64,000 nucleotides of DNA, from positions 22,692,001-22,756,000 of the forward strand of contig NC_043016.1 of NCBI RefSeq assembly GCF_006345805.1. The letters are read 5' to 3'. Positions 56,701-64,000 of the stretch are shown piece by piece. Positions within the stretch are counted from its first letter, which is position 1, and each line of letters begins with the position of its first letter. This DNA comes from Octopus sinensis. Lineage: Eukaryota. The notes beneath the pieces were generated by a model. It saw nothing but the letters and a program-made list of their open reading frames with translations, had not been told where the DNA came from and did not search any database. Position numbers and translations under genes: made by a program.

Positions 56701-57529
56701 AGAGGATTTGTGCTTTATATTGAGGCTATTTAATTTGTACAAAAGCTGGGCAGTGTGATTCCTATTTTTAAAAGATATGCAGTTTTTAAAAGGGAAATTT
56801 CACTACATTAAACAGATGGGACTACATGGGAACTCTTTCAGTGACGTACATGGTCCCTATTTTTAGGACATTAAAAAGTTTAGCTGTTGATTACACACAT
56901 CTCTATCATCTCTCTATCACTAATTATGTTAAATTGGTAATCAGCTGTACAAATACTTTAATTAAAATCCTTCCAAAGACAATAATTTGATGTATTAGCA
57001 ATAGGTCAAAGAAGCATATATTAAAGTAGTGAACATGAAAAGGTTCTGTGAACCTATTACAGGAGGGTCTAATTTTACAGTAAGACAAAATACATATAAC
57101 CCCTGTATGTGTAATCATGTACTATTTTCCTAGACAACATTGTAAAATGAATTAATCTATAAATAAGTTCACAGCTAACATTTATATTACCTAGTAATAC
57201 AATATACACAAAGAGAATCTAGAATATTAATTAGCTAAAATAGTTTAATTCACAGAACTGAAAAATTAAGTTTTGAATATATAAAATAATTAGTATGGGT
57301 GTTTTATGTGCACCTGATTTTATAAGTGTTATTTGAGTAATACATTGAATTGAAAAAAAAGTAAGTTTTATTTACAAGTGACAATATAAAATATAAAACT
57401 GAGAAATCCTTTCAATGAACTGGAAATCAACAACTATTTAATCATAAAAGACAGAAATAGAAAATAAAATTATCAACATTAAATTATAATAAGCATTGGT
57501 ATTAAATATTCAAATAATTTCTGTATTTG

Positions 57530-57560
<31 letters not shown>

Positions 57561-58753
57561 CCATATAGGATCAGAAAATTAGGGATAATTGGAAGACCCC
57601 AAATACTGATCACTCTTAATAATGATAACAATAATAGCACATTTAACAAAAATCAATTTTAAACACATAAACAAAACAAAAAAGGGTAAAAGAAAGAGAA
57701 GTGTGATTCAGGTGATCTGTTAGTCATGGCCAATGGAGTTGGCTGTTTTATAATAAATGCAAGACAGTTTGTCTACTGTAAGCAAAAGCAAGACATGCAA
57801 ACTGAATTTATCTGATTTTGTTCCCTGTTGAACATAGCCATGTGTACAACAACAATAATGACAACATCAATTATTCACCTTCACCATTCCCATGAAAAAA
57901 TAAACAAATAGAGTAAATAAATTTTCAATGTAAGAGAAGAGGATAAGGGTAACTAGAATAAATATGTACATAACGAGAGGAATAAAGAGGGATAAATAAA
58001 TACAACCAAGAAAGGGGGTAAAGAAATAACTTCTAAAAACTGAAATAAGTGAATAAGCTATATATTTTTGATTAATTATATGATCTCAATTAACATCTAA
58101 CAAGGCCTGACAAGATTTTGTTAGGAAATAATACACAGAAGCAACAAAAAAAGCAACATTTAATTATGACATCACAAAATACTTGGGGACGTGAGCTCCT
58201 CATGGTAATAAATTTTTATTAATATGATTATAGAACATTTATTATAAGTGTTGTGGAGAACTATTCTGTAGAATATATAATATTCCTTTACATTGCAAGT
58301 ATACTACGATTGATTTCATCAGATCTACATAATTCTCATTGATGGTTTAATTTGCAAGAAAATTGGAGTTATTTAATGTCCAGATGCTTAATGAATATAT
58401 AGGTGAAACATCATCAGTTTTACCTCTGATCTAATTTAATTCGTTGGTCACAATTTTCAGAATTTATTTCAAATAATAGATGGAATTGAAAATCACATGT
58501 GTGTGTATCATTTTTTATAACTATGTATATATTTTTAACAATGATAATGCCCTGTATTCTTCCTGTTTTATGTTTTCATTTTGTTTTAAATATAAAAAAA
58601 TTTCCTTGTGCATCCTTCCATGAAGATATTCTCACTTGTAGTAATTAACCAAATTAATTTAGTTAAATTATATTTGGTTAATGTTATGCTGTAAGTAATG
58701 AATTGAAACAATTGTAAGTCTGGTCTTGTCAATGCTAATAAACTTTTATTAAT

Positions 58754-59240
58754 CATCATCATCATTGTTCGACCGTGGTCGAGACAATGGAATTTACCAT
58801 GTTACGCCCGACTTCACGGTCCATCATGGCATTATGGAGGTCCTGTTGCTGGATGCCTGTATCCCTGGAGATTACATCAGGGTAAGAGAGTGTGCGCCCT
58901 CTGGTATTGCGAGTAGATGGCTTCCAGAGGAGAAGAGTAGAAATTGCCTCGTTTTCAGCTCTACAACAATGTCCAGCAAACTGGACTCTCCTACCTTTCC
59001 CAAGAGATGACACGGGTGGTTGTTTCCCATATATTTGCATTTTGGATGGATGACGCTTCCACAAGAGATTTTGAGCTCTCATAAGGAGGCGAGTGTAGGT
59101 TCCATCCAACCGCCTCTCAAGCTTCTTTGATAACATCCAGGTTTCTGAGCCATATAGTAGAATTGGTTCGACTGTGGCTTTGAAGATTTCAAGTTTGAAG
59201 TCTCTACTTAGATTTGATGACCAGATCTTATTAATCCTAT
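58754..59240 (-). mobile_element. 5'-truncated RTE-X-like LINE with an intact ORF2 C-terminal frame
   Basis: KIWSSNL..FKATVEPILLYGSETW..LDGTYTRLL..RRVQFAGHCCR..LLLWKP..MMDRE; (TGA)n tail; possible TSD ttattaatc at 58746-54 and 59228-36. Confidence 0.88.
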
Positions 59241-59559
59241 CGCTATCTTCTCTCTTGTTTTGTACAATATTAATAATACTATGTATGTATGTGCCTGCTT
59301 TGTTAGGCATTAAACCAGTCTAATCTTGGATATGTTTATCCCTCTGAGGTTCATATCCTCATTTGTACTTTGATCTATATATACATCATATATATAATGT
59401 CTTTAGATCCATATAGATGTAACCATTGATCTATGGGTTGGTATGTTGTACTGTATGACTATTTGGTTATGATTATATTGTTGGACATGAACAGCTATTT
59501 TCAATACTTAATTTCTATAACAATTACTAAAGGTGGGCGCACACTTGCTCTGATTTATC

Positions 59560-60440
59560 ACTGCACTTACAGATAGTCTTCTTCATGCAGACCTTCTCCT
59601 GCCATGCCCAAGATCTCTTCTCAGCCAATCAGAAAATGCTCAGGGAAGAGAGCAGAGGCATCCATCCAATAATAGGGGACAACATCTTTCGATGGTTTGT
59701 GGCTGGGATAGCATGTAGATCAGACTGGGATGACCTGAAGGAGGCACTAACCCCTGTCTAGCTGGGGGTGGGAGTCAAGTGTGAATGTGAGGCTGCTGAC
59801 CATGTGGCCAGACATTACATACAGCATACATCACCTATGGAACTCCAACACACTCATGGCTGCTGCTAACAGGGCTGTTTCTTTAACAGGTGTCCAGCAG
59901 GGTGACCCTCTTGGTCCACATCTTTTTGCATTGGTTGTCAATGATGTTACCCAATTAGTCCTCTCACCCTTCAATGTCTCATAACTTGGATGACGTGACC
60001 TTAGGTGACTCAGCTGAGTCTGTAGTTGGCGACCTTCAGCAAATCATCTCAGTCCTAAAGCTTCTTGGGCTTGAAATCAACCCATCCAAGTCAGAGGTGA
60101 TAAACATGAGCTATGATGAAACTGAATTCCAAGACACCATACTCAGCATTCATCCCATCTCGGCAGAGGCTTGGCTGATATCAAGGAACGCTGTCTGCAT
60201 TCTTGGTTCCCCAAACCCCTCAAAAGCCATAACAGAGTGCCTGGAGACCAAGATTGTGGACTTATGTAGAATGACTGGGAGATTACACTTTGTTGATACA
60301 TACCTGATGCTCTTCCTTTTGCAAGCAGTTCCAAGAGGAAAAGCACCGGGTATGCAGTGCACCAGGTCACCCTCTTAGAGATTGCCTCAGTGATAATAAT
60401 GGCATTATCTTTCTCTTGCACTAGGAACATCCACTGCAGA
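59560..60440 (+). mobile_element. Decayed CRE-clade (early-branching non-LTR) reverse transcriptase
   Basis: RGIHPIIGDNIFRWFVAGIAC (cf. GGIRPIAVG..FRRL), LGVGVKCECEAADHVAR (cf. QLGVGV.GGCEAAVHAAR), TGVQQGDPLGPHLF, PFNVS*LDDVTLG, LGLEINPSKSEV. Confidence 0.82.
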
Positions 60441-60880
60441 GGCTGCAGTTAACCACAATGGTGAAACATGTTGGGAACAAATGATATAAATTTCATCTTG
60501 TGTTTATCATGTTTTCCTATTCTTTTATTTGTTTGTCATTTTACTACAACCATGCTAGAGTACCACCTTGAAGGATTTTAATCAAAAAAAAAAAATCAAT
60601 CCCAGGACTTGTTCTATTTTGTTGAACTGCTAAGTTACAGGGACATAAACACACCAACACTGGTTGCCAAGCAGTGATGGTAGGGACAAATACAGACATA
60701 TACATATATGGCAGGCTTCTTTCATTGTCCATATACCAAACCCACTCACAAGGCTTTGGTCAACACAAGGCTATAGTAGAAGACACTTTCCCAAGATGCC
60801 ATGCAGTGGGACTGAACCAACATGGAACCATGTGGTTGGGAAGCAAGTTTCTTCCCATACAGACCTGCCTGTACCTATAT

Positions 60881-60918
<38 letters not shown>

Positions 60919-60926
60919 TACATACA

Positions 60927-61710
60927 CAAGGTCTGACCAATAAGTATCCAGACTGTTATAATAACGAGGCTAAAGCACACAGAGTGAAGCTGCTAGGTAA
61001 AGATTGACCTTGAACTCTGTTGTGCATGCACACTAAGTTATCACATTCTAGCTCACTTCCACTGTTTACAGCAGTGCTTGGAAGGAAGGTGTGTAGCATG
61101 TGATCATCACATTGACCATGATAGGGAAAGTTGTTATGGCAATACCTGCTCAGAGGCCTACACAGTTATAGAAAATGTATGAGCTGCACACGAGTGTATG
61201 AGTGGTTCAGATGTTTCCAAGATGGCCAAGAAAAACATCACAGGTGTTCCTGCAGCTGTGAGGGGGGGGGGGAATCATCGAATCACCATCTTTGAGTTAT
61301 TAGAGGATGTGCAGATTAGTTGCAGTTTAATTCAGTACATTATCACTGAGGATTTGTATATAAGATACATGTCTGCCAAGTTTGTGACAAAACTGCTTTC
61401 AGCTGACCAAAAAGACATGGGTTTCAGTTGCACAAGACCTTGATAGTCTTGAGAACAAGGAAAACTTTTTGAAAACTTTGCATAGGCCTCTGAGCCGGTA
61501 TTGCCAAGCTTTTAGCAGATTCTCTGCTCAACTTTCACTATCATGGTCAATGTGACAATCACACGCTACACACATTCCTTCCAAGTACTGCTGGAAACAG
61601 CAGAAGTGAGCTAGAATGTGATAACTTAGTGTGCATGCACTGTAGAGTTAAAGGACAATCTTTGCCTAGCAGCTTCACTCTGCATGCTTCAGCTTCGTTA
61701 CTATGACAAC
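60927..61710 (+). mobile_element. Mariner-derived element whose ~180-bp left end is repeated in inverted orientation on the right
   Basis: TIR-like caaggtctgaccaataagtatccagact; transposase scraps VYEWFRCFQDG and MSAKFVTKLLSADQK; 60955-61133 matches the reverse complement of 61529-61710. Confidence 0.85.
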
Positions 61711-62821
61711 AGGCCAGATATATTTGCTTCTAGATATTTTCTATTTTCAATATGACACTTTTTTTGAAAACCACATTTTGATGCTATGATTTAGTGTAAA
61801 TTTTCAAAATACACTACATAGTGAAGTCCAGGATCGAAAATTATACAATCTTAAATGTGTAAATTGATTTAGCTCAAAAGATTTCAACCACTCATTGTAG
61901 CAACTCAGCTATTTAGTTGTATCTACTTGATGTGTTGGATGGGTGTCTATTAGAAATGCTACCAAAAAATACAATGTCTGAATTAAATATGTATCAGGAG
62001 AAAGTACAAAAATCAATGCTTTTTGCAGTGAAAAATGCATTGAGCTTGCAGGGCTAAATCCTAATACTCAAAGTTAGATTGCAGTAATGATTTATTCTAC
62101 AGAAATAGGGTCATGAGTTTGCAGAGAAGAATTCTAGTTGATTGACGAGACCCAGTAGATTACTGGGACTTACTGGAAGAATCACATCAACAAGACCACA
62201 CATACACAACAAAGACTGACGGAAAGCAGTTTACAACAGTGAACAATTCAGACATTTGCAGACGATAAAACATAAAAATGCCAACAACATGCTATGTTAC
62301 GAGAAATCAATTTGAACACTTGACAAATATTGTGGGACACTTTTTAATGTAAGAACATTGAAGTTACAAAATATGTTGATTCATATACAACATAATAGTT
62401 TTAATACACTGAGAATGTTGTTAAACATAAAATGACAATGACCAACAGAATAAGCAGTACAAATAAAGAATACTGATTCATCAGGACTTCACATACAAAT
62501 GGTACAGATATTTACAAGGACATTAAACAAAACAGTACAAATACAAAAGCAAGCAAATGTGCACACGCGCACAAAAAACACAGACATCCAAGGAAATGTA
62601 GCAAGACATGGCAGAACACAAAAGACAATCCTTGTCAAGCCTTGTTGCATAATTTTTTTTCTTTCCTTATGGATATTATATAATGCTATATTATAAACCA
62701 AATCATGGGATCTATTTAACAAATAAAAAAAGAAAGGACAATATTTAAAGCCTCTTCAACAGTGCTTGAATGCTGCAAAGCAACAACTTAAAGAGAGATG
62801 GGCTTAGGACAGTAATCTTAC

Positions 62822-62839
62822 CGAAAAAGTTGTCGCTCA
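62822..62839 (-). CDS. MAPK8IP3/SPAG9: JIP3/4 18-nt microexon (phase 1-1), encodes (V)SDNFF(G)
   Basis: Minus strand: tctttattttctttttctttttacctgctatcttcag|TGAGCGACAACTTTTTCG|gtaaga. The final G joins GT ATG GGT AAA of the 53758 exon to give FFGMGKE. Confidence 0.85.
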
Positions 62840-63258
62840 CTGAAGATAGCAGGTAAAAAGAAAAAGAAAATAAAGAATGATACATGTGTAATTATATTAA
62901 TAAAGCAATGGTTAATCAAATTGAAATAGATATTGTTTGATTTTACATTTTATTTTCAAGACAAACAGTTAAGCATAAAATGTAAAGCAATTTTAACAAA
63001 AAAAAAAGCATTCAAAAACATTTTCAGATATTTCATTAAACAACAGTAGAAGAGAAAAGAAAATGATGTAATTATTGCAATAAATACATTCTAGATCCTT
63101 GTATTTTTAAACCTTCCACACAATAGTTTAATACGAATATATAGTCTTCCTTTATGTGTATAGACACAAGCGCACAATGGCTTATAGAAAAGTTGATTTT
63201 AACATGCCACAGGGTAAGAAAGATAATTTTCTGTAGAGTATGTCTGAACATAAGCACA

Positions 63259-63309
<51 letters not shown>

Positions 63310-64000
63310 GTTTTGCTCAGAAAAAAGTTTGGTATTACAATTAAAAGAGTTTGAATGACAACCACAGTATGATGACTAAAACTTTAATTTTATTGAAAAT
63401 CCACATATTCTCTCTATAGAATTTAAATATGTCTGGTATTTTTTTAAGTGATGCAGATTGGACAATAAATATCAGGCAATAACCAAGTGAACCACAATAT
63501 AGCAAAAAAATTTATCAGATACGTTTAATCATACCAAACACATCTTTAGGCAAAGACAAGATATATATCATGGACATGCAATTTTTATAGAATGCCTGGG
63601 AGATATAAGACAATTATGTATAGCTCTTTTCAGACTGCATAGAACCCATGGAATAATGCAGAAGTTTAATATGATTACTATTAAGAGATGCAAACAAAAC
63701 AGTAACTTTTAGTTGCACCTAGTGCAATAAATATAACACACATATATATTACTAAAACTCAAAGTTTGTGTTTTCCTGCCCTTTGATTAATATGACAAAA
63801 ATTACAAAGAAAACAGTCATTTCCTCCTTTAAAAAAAAAAAAATCAAGTTGAAAATGTCAAATAGTGGCGGCGGCACTTCAGAGAGTTGTCACAGCTACT
63901 GCCGTCCAGCCTTTTTTCCTTCCCCAAATCATTTATACAACTTTCGGAGTGCCATGGACTGAAAGATAGATATTCTCCCTATATTTTTATGAGATATTTT

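What the first reader, a model, noticed from the sequence alone, without database searches (positions are those of the whole stretch)
62822..62851. 18-nt microexon (VSDNFF) with an SRRM4/eMIC-type UGC motif, apparently shared with vertebrate JIP3
Seen: an 18-nt symmetric exon 9,063 nt from the next exon, a long U-rich pyrimidine tract, and TGC at -12 to -10 (62849-51). Known: neural microexons regulated by SRRM3/4 (eMIC domain, bilaterian origin) carry UGC close to the 3' splice site. From memory, human JIP3 reads ..VRDDFFGMGKEV.. with VRDDFF on an 18-nt alternative exon, and fly Syd has ..VSDNFYGMGKEV... If confirmed, this is one of the rare microexons conserved between vertebrates and a mollusc, sitting directly before the ARF6/kinesin-light-chain-binding leucine zipper II.
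Basis: partly seen in the sequence, partly recalled or inferred. Interest (0 to 1): 0.75.

Follow-up and report, generated by a model that had tools for sequence, protein, structure and literature searches.

The report
Ancient 18-nt microexon in octopus JIP3/4
This is a real, alternatively spliced 18-base exon of the octopus JIP3/4 (Sunday driver) transport-adaptor gene, and it matches in length, reading phase and position an exon found in vertebrates, a brachiopod and arthropods; its neuron-specific, SRRM/eMIC-type control in octopus is plausible but untested.

Summary
On the minus strand, 62839-62822 is an 18-nt phase-1/phase-1 exon (VSDNFF) with AG/GTAAGA splice sites, a U-rich tract, TGC at -12..-10 and a 9,063-nt downstream intron.

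It is a real cassette. Octopus RefSeq isoforms and assembled cephalopod transcripts exist with and without it.

It is the same exon as vertebrate JIP3 VRDDFF. I read an 18-nt, phase-1 exon directly before the MGKE (leucine zipper II) exon in marmoset, the fish Danionella and the brachiopod Lingula, and in 14 non-redundant protostome loci (23 before de-duplication) pulled from metagenomes. The 'would refute' condition on length and phase is therefore not met.

The regulatory claim is only partly supported:
- A single TGC is expected by chance in 17-37% of cases.
- Danionella has no TGC within 120 nt.
- The exon has a 249-nt AG-exclusion zone (top 0.1% of the window). This zone is longer than that of the next exon in 19 of 19 orthologous loci.
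- The fly orthologue (syd, 18 nt) is listed as eMIC-sensitive in published data.

Tissue specificity in octopus could not be tested. The exon is already annotated and its fly and vertebrate counterparts are known. What is new is the exon-level homology across Bilateria, where a recent preprint describes the gene as a hotspot of convergent neural exons.

The parts
62822..62839 (-). 18-nt cassette microexon, phase 1-1, encoding V-S-D-N-F-F
   Evidence: The peptide is present in octopus proteins P0001-5 and P0354 and absent from P0007, P0358 and P0363.
62840..62841 (-). 3' splice-site AG
62842..62882 (-). U-rich polypyrimidine tract (86% pyrimidine at -40..-4)
62849..62851 (-). UGC at -12..-10, between the pyrimidine tract and the AG
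   Evidence: Chance expectation is 17-37%.
62905..62907 (-). Second UGC, at -68..-66
62842..63090 (-). AG-exclusion zone of 249 nt upstream of the 3' splice site, implying a possibly distal branch point. TTAAY branch-point-like motifs start at -61, -76, -133 and -200.
   Evidence: top 0.1% of 3,220 AG sites on this strand, against 65 and 61 nt for the next two exons. for the motifs.
62816..62821 (-). 5' splice site GTAAGA. GTAAG is also found in the four orthologues I located without using it as a search criterion.
62842..64000 (-). Upstream intron, partial. The upstream exons (..GEYASS and the acidic cassette ESDKENDREST) lie beyond the window end.
53759..62821 (-). Downstream intron, 9,063 nt
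53701..53758 (-). Next exon, (G)MGKELENLILENTELLATK: the start of leucine zipper II
51813..51870 (-). Exon (K)NALNVVKDDLIAKVDELT(S): the LZII core, the KLC-binding heptads in mouse JIP3
50437..50584 (-). Exon (S)EHEIMREEINSLQ...AQADEE: the rest of the LZII coiled coil
50015..50205 (-). Exon [49 protein letters not shown]...: the RH2 domain

Best explanation
Shown:
- The feature is an alternatively spliced 18-nt cassette microexon of the single octopus JIP3/JIP4 (Sunday driver/UNC-16) gene.
- Inclusion inserts VSDNFF between a disordered, alternatively spliced linker and the first residues (GMGKE) of leucine zipper II. This coiled coil binds kinesin light chain and ARF6 in the mammalian proteins.
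- It is orthologous, exon for exon, to the vertebrate JIP3 VRDDFF exon and to the arthropod V[NT]DN[FY]F exon, which includes the Drosophila syd neural microexon. It therefore dates at least to the last common ancestor of protostomes and deuterostomes.

Inferred:
- The exon is too short for ordinary exon definition. It is recognised through an unusual 3' region: a very long AG-free zone suggesting a distal branch point, a long U-rich tract, and a UGC 10-12 nt from the AG. It also has a strong GTAAG donor.
- In neurons, the eMIC-containing isoform of octopus Srrm234 would bind near the UGC and promote early 3' splice-site recognition, raising inclusion. Elsewhere the exon would be skipped more often.
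- At the protein level, the conserved acidic-aromatic D-x-F-F caps the N-terminus of LZII. It probably tunes motor or GTPase binding, or the linker-LZII conformation, and so alters axonal transport behaviour.

I give about 0.95 to the shown part and about 0.5 to the eMIC/neural part.
For: Exon reality and alternative use:
- O. bimaculoides RefSeq isoforms show all four combinations of the upstream acidic cassette and this microexon. X4 and X13 lack the microexon only, X6 lacks the acidic cassette only, and X7 lacks both.
- Assembled RNA contigs of a cuttlefish-like cephalopod (P0388-P0397) show the same four combinations.

Orthology:
- Lingula has ag|TCAGTGACACGTTCTTTG|gtaagc.
- Danionella JIP3 has ag|TCCGGGATGATTTCTTCG|gtaagg.
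- Callithrix MAPK8IP3 has ag|TGCGTGATGATTTCTTTG|gtaagg.
- All three are 18 nt, phase 1, and immediately upstream of the MGKE exon.
- Polypterus JIP4-like has a 15-nt exon (DHSFF) in the same place and phase.
- 23 metagenome-derived animal loci carry the 18-nt exon with the MGKEVENL exon 86-1,007 nt downstream.
- V, D, F and F are at least 90% conserved in the alignment, and the following GMG is invariant.
- The peptide is also present in priapulid, mite and nematode proteins, and as an 8-residue version in a sea star.

Regulation:
- The AG-exclusion zone is 249 nt, in the top 0.1% of the window.
- In 19 non-redundant orthologous loci its median is 129 nt, against 31 nt for the next exon. It is longer in 19 of 19 (Wilcoxon p=3.8e-6).
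- TGC at -30..-6 occurs in 10 of 19 loci against 5.3 expected (p about 0.009). The next exon shows no enrichment.
- Published eMIC exon code: long AG-exclusion zones, UGC near the 3' splice site and long pyrimidine tracts (PMC8797185).
- Fly syd exon DmeEX0009788 (18 nt) is classed eMIC-sensitive (Table S2 of PMC8797185).
- The fly exon is neural-specific, adjacent to LZII, and its deletion gives phenotypes (preprint 10.64898/2026.09.05.749416).

Protein context:
- Pfam LZII starts at the last F of the exon.
- The AlphaFold2 monomer model starts the LZII helix at the second F, with low confidence there.
- The KLC2 site lies at residues 433-450 of a construct that starts at 417, after the microexon.
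Against: - No octopus expression data were available, so neural enrichment is untested.
- One UGC is expected by chance in 17-37% of sites. The constitutive next exon also has a TGC at -5.
- The Danionella orthologue has no TGC within 120 nt, and the marmoset's nearest is at -35.
- The UGC enrichment across orthologues is modest. It is not corrected for the several distance windows tried or for relatedness of the loci.
- The octopus tract is U-rich with UCUU motifs rather than alternating UCUC, which fits PTB-type repression equally well.
- The fly exon is only 'sensitive', meaning a PSI change of 10-20 or a response to human SRRM4 overexpression, not 'dependent'.
- It was not among the four exons shared by the fly and mouse eMIC programmes.
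- In mouse, the eMIC-dependent Mapk8ip3 exon listed is a different 24-nt exon, SPRQSWRK.
- The protein-level role of the hexapeptide is pure inference. All solved LZII structures omit it.
Confidence: 0.55

Rival explanations
1. The exon is a genuine ancient alternative microexon, but in octopus it is not controlled by the eMIC domain or is not neural-specific. Inclusion could be the default in most tissues. Skipping could be set by other factors such as PTB-like repressors on the U-rich/UCUU tract, ELAV/CELF-type proteins or U1-associated PRP-40, as for another exon of C. elegans unc-16.
For: - UCUU motifs at -37, -28, -22 and -7, and a long AG-free zone, are also typical of PTB-repressed exons.
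- The single UGC is not significant.
- The Danionella orthologue lacks UGC.
- 9 of 13 O. bimaculoides isoform models include the exon.
- The fly exon has substantial inclusion in ovary and is only eMIC-sensitive.
- The mouse 18-nt exon is not in the held part of the eMIC-dependent list.
- C. elegans unc-16 splicing is run by UNC-75, EXC-7 and PRP-40.
Against: - The fly orthologue does respond to eMIC loss or SRRM4 overexpression.
- The conserved long AG-exclusion zone and the UGC enrichment match the published eMIC code.
- No Rbfox GCAUG lies within 300 nt on either side.
Confidence: 0.35
2. Convergence: protostomes and vertebrates independently created a microexon in the same intron, in line with the preprint's description of this gene family as a hotspot of independent, convergent neural exons. 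The resemblance would then be due to functional constraint.
For: - The preprint infers independent type I or type II convergent events in arthropod, deuterostome and vertebrate ancestors for this gene family.
- Exon length varies: 15 nt in Polypterus JIP4-like and 8 residues in a sea star.
- A quail assembly lacks the exon.
- Ciona, lamprey, rotifer and fluke proteins seen here lack it.
Against: - Same intron, same phase 1, and the same 18 nt in mollusc, brachiopod, teleost, primate and many arthropod loci.
- Shared V-x-D-x-F-F with the same split Val and Gly codons.
- The whole three-cassette order (..[EY/EF]..S | acidic | DNF[FY]) recurs in sea star and protostomes.
- The preprint's classes concern tissue-specific regulation and depend on ExOrthist orthology calls; an ancestral exon is still compatible with them.
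Confidence: 0.04
3. The exon is constitutive in octopus, and the skipped isoforms are annotation or assembly artefacts.
For: Skipped forms in octopus itself are known here only from Gnomon models.
Against: - Independent RNA-derived contigs of another cephalopod show both forms.
- Argonauta's single model skips the exon.
- The same 6-residue indel recurs in mammals, teleosts, spiders and a sea star.
Confidence: 0.05

Closest known systems
Drosophila melanogaster syd microexon DmeEX0009788 (chr3L:7931232-7931249)
   Same: [quoted passage not shown] It is neural-specific and classed eMIC-sensitive, and its deletion gives hyperactivity and reduced offspring. Insect genomic loci recovered here have the same AG/18 nt/GTAAG phase-1 structure.
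   Different: Insect peptides seen here are VNDN[FY][FY] rather than VSDNFF. The flanking introns are about 0.5 kb in fly, against 9 kb downstream and more than 1.1 kb upstream in octopus. I did not read the fly locus itself.
Vertebrate MAPK8IP3/JIP3 18-nt exon (VRDDFF)
   Same: Same length, phase and position, with 4 of 6 residues identical. It has a GTAAG donor and a long AG-exclusion zone (96-129 nt). It is alternatively included in mammals and teleosts.
   Different: - It is preceded by a 12-nt GEFS microexon instead of the longer ..NPGEYASS and acidic cassettes.
- UGC is at -35 in marmoset and absent within 120 nt in Danionella.
- It is not listed as eMIC-dependent in the part of the mouse table available to me.
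Vertebrate SPAG9/JIP4 microexons (Polypterus JIP4-like)
   Same: Same intron, phase 1..FF|G ending, GTAAG donor, long pyrimidine tract, and UGC at -15..-13.
   Different: It is 15 nt (DHSFF). The UGC is part of a UGCAUG (Rbfox-type) motif. Most annotated JIP4 proteins seen lack it.
Mouse Mapk8ip3 24-nt eMIC-dependent microexon MmuEX0027856 (SPRQSWRK)
   Same: It is a neural, Srrm3/4-dependent microexon in the orthologous gene.
   Different: It sits about 200 residues further N-terminal and is not homologous to the octopus exon.
C. elegans unc-16/JIP3 84-nt neuron-type-specific cassette
   Same: It is an alternative exon of the orthologous gene with neuron-specific control.
   Different: It is 84 nt, is controlled by UNC-75/CELF, EXC-7/ELAV and PRP-40, and its position relative to LZII was not established here.

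Membership tests
Exon orthologous to the vertebrate JIP3 / fly syd LZII-adjacent microexon | Host gene is the JIP3/4 (syd/unc-16) orthologue | tested here: met
   Window exons are identical to Octopus JIP3/4 proteins carrying RH1, JIP_LZII and WD40 domains. PDB JIP3 matches at 1e-115.
Exon orthologous to the vertebrate JIP3 / fly syd LZII-adjacent microexon | Same intron position: last cassette before the exon that starts (G)MG[KR]E | tested here: met
   Octopus, Lingula, Danionella, Callithrix, Polypterus JIP4-like and 23 metagenome loci.
Exon orthologous to the vertebrate JIP3 / fly syd LZII-adjacent microexon | Same reading phase (1-1, with split Val and Gly codons) | tested here: met
Exon orthologous to the vertebrate JIP3 / fly syd LZII-adjacent microexon | Same length (18 nt) | tested here: met
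   18 nt in octopus, Lingula, Danionella, Callithrix and the metagenome loci. Fly is 18 nt from the literature. Exceptions: 15 nt in Polypterus JIP4-like and 8 residues in a sea star, inferred from isoforms.
Exon orthologous to the vertebrate JIP3 / fly syd LZII-adjacent microexon | Sequence similarity of the encoded peptide | tested here: met
   VSDNFF against VRDDFF, 4 of 6 identical. V, D, F and F are at least 90% conserved in a 50-sequence alignment.
SRRM3/4-Srrm234 (eMIC)-dependent neural microexon | Length 3-27 nt, frame-preserving | tested here: met
   18 nt, phase 1-1.
SRRM3/4-Srrm234 (eMIC)-dependent neural microexon | Alternative cassette, not constitutive | tested here: met
   RefSeq isoforms with and without the exon, and both forms in cephalopod RNA contigs.
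SRRM3/4-Srrm234 (eMIC)-dependent neural microexon | UGC motif close upstream of the 3' splice site | tested here: inconclusive
   Present at -12..-10, but chance is 17-37%. Across 19 orthologues it is enriched about 1.9-fold at -30..-6 (p about 0.009, uncorrected). It is absent in Danionella.
SRRM3/4-Srrm234 (eMIC)-dependent neural microexon | Long AG-exclusion zone and long polypyrimidine tract | tested here: met
   AG-exclusion zone of 249 nt (top 0.1% of the window) and 86% pyrimidine at -40..-4. Orthologues: median 129 nt against 31 nt for the next exon, longer in 19 of 19. The criterion comes from PMC8797185.
SRRM3/4-Srrm234 (eMIC)-dependent neural microexon | Higher inclusion in neural than in non-neural tissue | not testable with these tools
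   No octopus RNA-seq access. The fly orthologue is reported as neural-specific.
SRRM3/4-Srrm234 (eMIC)-dependent neural microexon | Inclusion depends on the eMIC domain | not testable with these tools
   Only indirect evidence. The fly orthologue is classed eMIC-sensitive. It was not among the four exons shared by the fly and mouse programmes.

The most novel reading that the evidence does not exclude
The VSDNFF exon would be a surviving member of the ancestral bilaterian eMIC-dependent neural microexon programme. It would be the last unit of a three-cassette module (..GE[YF](A)SS | acidic | V-x-D-x-F-F) placed just before the bilaterian-specific kinesin-light-chain-binding zipper of JIP3/4. 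Its distal-branch-point architecture would have been kept for more than 500 million years. That would make it one of very few exons with both exon-level and regulatory conservation from cephalopods to mammals, and would mean that the 'convergent hotspot' reading of this gene partly reflects missed microexon orthology.
Probability: 0.3. Interest if true: 0.65.

Novelty: new member of a known kind. Interest (0 to 1): 0.5.

Why it matters
[quoted passage not shown] A 2026 preprint treats syd/MAPK8IP3/SPAG9 as a hotspot of convergent neural exons.

This locus shows that at least the LZII-adjacent microexon is one and the same exon in molluscs, brachiopods, arthropods and vertebrates, and it shares a distinctive 3' splice-site architecture across them. 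If its neural, eMIC-dependent use also holds in octopus, it gives a concrete handle on what the ancestral bilaterian microexon programme regulated.

The gene is relevant in its own right. It is a motor adaptor whose human orthologue causes neurodevelopmental disease, and the exon sits next to an interface (KLC binding) that itself arose with Bilateria. It also flags six conserved residues that every solved LZII structure has left out.

Tried and rejected
- Cephalopod genomic comparison to test conservation of the UGC failed. The Argonauta gene spans 185 kb, so no DNA was returned. Other cephalopod genes are expected to be as long.
- Six look-ups of non-longest isoforms or partial models returned nothing: human X7, Solea, one Danionella product, Mytilus edulis and Cryptotermes. 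Two Logan contigs stopped about 1.1 kb into the intron.
- The zebrafish microexon-knockout paper does not say, in the text or the supplements held, which mapk8ip3 microexon was removed. I did not use it as evidence for this exon.
- The C. elegans unc-16 'microexon' papers concern an 84-nt exon, so I rejected them as the same event.
- I looked for a pre-bilaterian origin. All 20 divergent representatives that I had named were bilaterian, so the question stays open.
- I looked for Rbfox, Nova and CELF motifs around the exon. Nothing was notable.
- The AlphaFold2 monomer model of an oyster N-terminal half places the FF at the start of the LZII helix, but with pLDDT about 55, which is too weak to build on.
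- No supplements are held for the 2026 preprint, so its per-species calls for octopus could not be read.

Full report

Yes. On the minus strand the sequence reads ...ttctttttctttttaccTGCtatcttcAG|TGAGCGACAACTTTTTCG|GTAAGAttac....
- The exon is 62839..62822, 18 nt.
- With the G donated by the upstream exon it reads GTG AGC GAC AAC TTT TTC = VSDNFF, and it passes a G to the next exon. It is therefore phase 1 on both sides.
- TGC is at 62851-62849 (-12..-10).
- Positions -40..-4 are 86% pyrimidine.
- The next exon, (G)GT ATG GGT AAA = GMGKELENLILENTELLATK, begins at 53758, so the intron is exactly 9,063 nt.
- Nothing competes for the site on the plus strand, and there is no Rfam hit.

**2. What gene is it, and is the exon used?**

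The window's minus strand encodes consecutive exons of the octopus JIP3/JIP4 (Sunday driver/UNC-16) orthologue, from this microexon to about residue 736. The upstream exons lie beyond position 64000.

A padded-query protein search returned O. vulgaris proteins reading ..NPGEYASS|VSDNFF|GMGKELENL.. It also returned an O. bimaculoides isoform reading ..ESDKENDREST|GMGKE.. without the hexapeptide.

Listing cluster members showed that the O. bimaculoides RefSeq isoforms cover all four combinations of an upstream acidic cassette (ESDKENDREST) and this microexon:
- X1-3, 5 and 8-12 have both.
- X4 and X13 have the acidic cassette only.
- X6 has the microexon only.
- X7 has neither.

RNA-derived Logan contigs of a cuttlefish-like cephalopod show the same four combinations. 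The exon is therefore a genuine cassette. Relative abundance and tissue distribution cannot be read from these data.

**3. Position in the protein**

- Pfam JIP_LZII begins at the last Phe of the microexon.
- The ARF6-JIP4 (2W83) and KLC2-JIP3 (6EJN) crystal constructs begin at MG[KR]E, immediately after it.
- In the KLC2 complex the contact residues are 433-450 of a construct that starts at 417.
- That paper also reports that the KLC-binding face of JIP3 is specific to Bilateria.
- An AlphaFold2 monomer model of an oyster N-terminal half starts the LZII helix at the second Phe, but confidence there is low.

**4. Is it the same exon as in vertebrates and other phyla?**

Human JIP3 in PDB 8PR2 reads VRDDFFGMGKEVGNLLLEN from residue 416. 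I obtained genomic loci and read the splice junctions directly:

| Species (gene) | Exon with flanks | Length | Peptide |
|---|---|---|---|
| Callithrix (MAPK8IP3) | ag\|TGCGTGATGATTTCTTTG\|gtaagg | 18 nt | VRDDFF |
| Danionella (JIP3) | ag\|TCCGGGATGATTTCTTCG\|gtaagg | 18 nt | VRDDFF |
| Lingula (brachiopod) | ag\|TCAGTGACACGTTCTTTG\|gtaagc | 18 nt | VSDTFF |
| Polypterus (JIP4-like) | ag\|ATCATAGTTTCTTTG\|gtaagg | 15 nt | DHSFF |

All are phase 1 and are the last cassette before the MG[KR]E exon.

A degenerate-pattern scan of metagenome contigs (AG, T, N4, GAY AAY TWY TTY, G, GTAAG) returned 49 loci. In 23 of them the MGKEVENL exon lies 86-1,007 nt downstream. These are host-animal DNA: insect-like, copepod-like and lophotrochozoan-like.

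At the protein level the peptide appears as follows:
- V[STNG]DNFF in most molluscs.
- V[NT]DN[FY][FY] in arthropods.
- VSDTFF in a priapulid.
- VNDTFI in a nematode.
- VMSPDNFY in a sea star.

V, D, F and F are at least 90% conserved, and the following GMG is invariant. Exact six-residue presence/absence variants occur in mammals and teleosts, and between two spider species; sea-star isoforms differ by the eight-residue version.

That criterion is not met. Convergence is very unlikely given the shared intron, phase, length and V-x-D-x-F-F.

The larger layout is shared too. Sea-star isoforms show IT|[VDPSEFS]|[DDSEESDVSYGFD]|[VMSPDNFY]|GMGKE. This parallels the protostome layout ..[G.xVNPGEYASS]|[acidic]|[VSDNFF]. 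It also parallels the vertebrate 12-nt GEFS/GEYS exon followed by the 18- or 15-nt exon.

**5. The regulatory claim**

One TGC proves little.
- In this window, 17% of all positions have a TGC at -20..-5 and 37% at -40..-5.
- The constitutive next exon has one at -5.
- The Danionella orthologue has none within 120 nt, and the marmoset's nearest is at -35.

There is no AG for 249 nt upstream of the 3' splice site (62842-63090).
- This is in the top 0.1% of 3,220 AG sites on this strand.
- The next two exons have 65 and 61 nt.

In 19 non-redundant orthologous loci:
- The AG-exclusion zone of the microexon has a median of 129 nt, against 31 nt for the adjacent MGKE exon.
- It is longer in 19 of 19 loci (Wilcoxon p=3.8e-6; the loci are not all phylogenetically independent).
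- TGC at -30..-6 occurs in 10 of 19 loci, against 5.3 expected from composition-preserving shuffles (p about 0.009, uncorrected for the several distance windows tried).
- The next exon shows no such enrichment.

Torres-Mendez et al. 2022 describe the eMIC exon code as long AG-exclusion zones, UGC near the 3' splice site, long pyrimidine tracts and strong branch points.
- Their Table S2 lists the fly syd 18-nt exon DmeEX0009788 as eMIC-sensitive.
- The same paper found only four exons at equivalent positions in the fly and mouse eMIC programmes, and syd is not one of them.
- The mouse Mapk8ip3 exon listed as eMIC-dependent is a different 24-nt exon, SPRQSWRK, about 200 residues upstream.

A September 2026 preprint reports that the fly syd microexon is neural-specific, with some ovary inclusion, and lies adjacent to LZII. 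Deleting it causes age-dependent hyperactivity and fewer offspring. The preprint describes the gene family as a hotspot of convergent neural exons. Octopus bimaculoides is in its data set, but no per-species result was readable.

**6. Most likely mechanism**

Shown: this is an ancient, alternatively used microexon that adds a conserved acidic-aromatic hexapeptide at the N-terminal edge of LZII.

Inferred (about 0.5): inclusion is boosted in neurons by the eMIC isoform of Srrm234 acting on the UGC, pyrimidine-tract and distal-branch-point region. The strong GTAAG donor would help an exon too short for exon definition.

Inferred (weak): the hexapeptide tunes motor or ARF6 engagement, or the linker-zipper conformation.

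The main rival (about 0.35) keeps the exon and its antiquity. It attributes control in octopus to other factors, for instance PTB-type repression on the UCUU-rich tract, or to little tissue specificity at all. Convergent origin and 'constitutive exon' are both unlikely (each 0.05 or less).

**7. Comparison with what is known, and novelty**

The exon is already in the octopus RefSeq models. Its fly and vertebrate counterparts are known, and the fly one has been studied functionally. This is therefore a new member of a known kind, not a new kind.

What the tools add:
- Junction-level proof of exon orthology across mollusc, brachiopod, arthropod-type and vertebrate genomes.
- A conserved, unusual 3' splice-site architecture.
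- A conserved three-cassette module.

The first point qualifies the 'convergent hotspot' description. The exon can be ancestral even if tissue-specific use was gained or lost repeatedly.

**8. Limits**

- No octopus expression data were available.
- No second cephalopod locus could be fetched, because the genes exceed 100 kb.
- The fly locus was not read directly.
- The mouse table was truncated in storage.
- Non-bilaterian orthologues were not recovered.

Noticed in passing
window 62842-63090 (-): There is a 249-nt stretch with no AG dinucleotide upstream of the microexon's 3' splice site. It is in the top 0.1% for this strand of the window. The orthologous exons in 18 other animal loci also have long AG-free zones (37-179 nt), always longer than that of the next exon.
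   Followed up: yes
outside the window (upstream exons); proteins P0354-P0364, P0548-P0553: The microexon is the last of three consecutive phase-1 cassettes before LZII: ..G.xVNPGEYASS, an acidic cassette, then V-x-D-x-F-F. The same order appears in sea-star isoforms. The vertebrate 12-nt GEFS/GEYS microexon looks like a remnant of the first cassette.
   Followed up: partly
L003 (Colinus virginianus JIP3 locus) 38410-48463: The quail assembly has the 12-nt GEFS microexon (from 46352) and the MGKEV exon (from 48462). No DDFF-type exon appears in any frame between the GADLL and MGKEV exons. This could be loss in this bird lineage or an assembly defect.
   Followed up: partly
L007 from 52425, L003 from 46352, L006 about 6991: The vertebrate JIP3 12-nt microexon (GEFS) has one to three UGCs within about 45 nt upstream. 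Its flanks are 74% identical between marmoset and quail over 163 nt. This is a clearer SRRM4-type picture than for the 18-nt exon.
   Followed up: partly
L006 8434-8451 (Danionella JIP3): The teleost 18-nt exon has a very long pyrimidine tract but no TGC in the 120 nt upstream. UGC is therefore not a fixed feature of this exon across species.
   Followed up: yes
window 4410-4509: A run of 100 N abuts the exon that starts DDGRMHAY (4407). The 26 residues VSEKTKKEKERERWEQYKQVRVHVKK present in O. vulgaris and O. bimaculoides proteins are not encoded anywhere in the window and probably sit in this gap. The O. sinensis model has a different short peptide there, which suggests the window may come from that assembly.
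   Followed up: partly
window 1364-1552 (-): Some RefSeq isoforms (for example O. bimaculoides X1 and X4) extend the exon ending ..LNEELK by VCAYDLECCL (1393-1364). Others splice at 1394. This is a second alternative event (alternative donor) in the same gene.
   Followed up: no
window about 24,500-28,300, 36,000-40,500 and 3,900-5,900: The introns contain long TA/CA/GA microsatellite arrays. They produce spurious long 'YIYIYI', 'CVCVCV' and 'SLSLSL' ORFs in mechanical ORF lists.
   Followed up: no
L008-L056 (JGI/ENA metagenome contigs): A 25-nt degenerate pattern for this microexon pulled out at least 23 animal (host or zooplankton) syd/JIP3 loci from 'metagenome' assemblies, several of them from the same sample series. 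This was a usable source of eukaryotic intron sequence.
   Followed up: yes
proteins P0202, P0209, P0370-P0378 (mammalian JIP3): Mammalian JIP3 isoforms differ by at least five short cassettes: SPRQSWRK(S) of 24 or 27 nt, a 31-residue cassette, GEFS of 12 nt, VRDDFF of 18 nt and VSSYLCTES of 27 nt. This confirms that the gene is unusually rich in microexons.
   Followed up: partly
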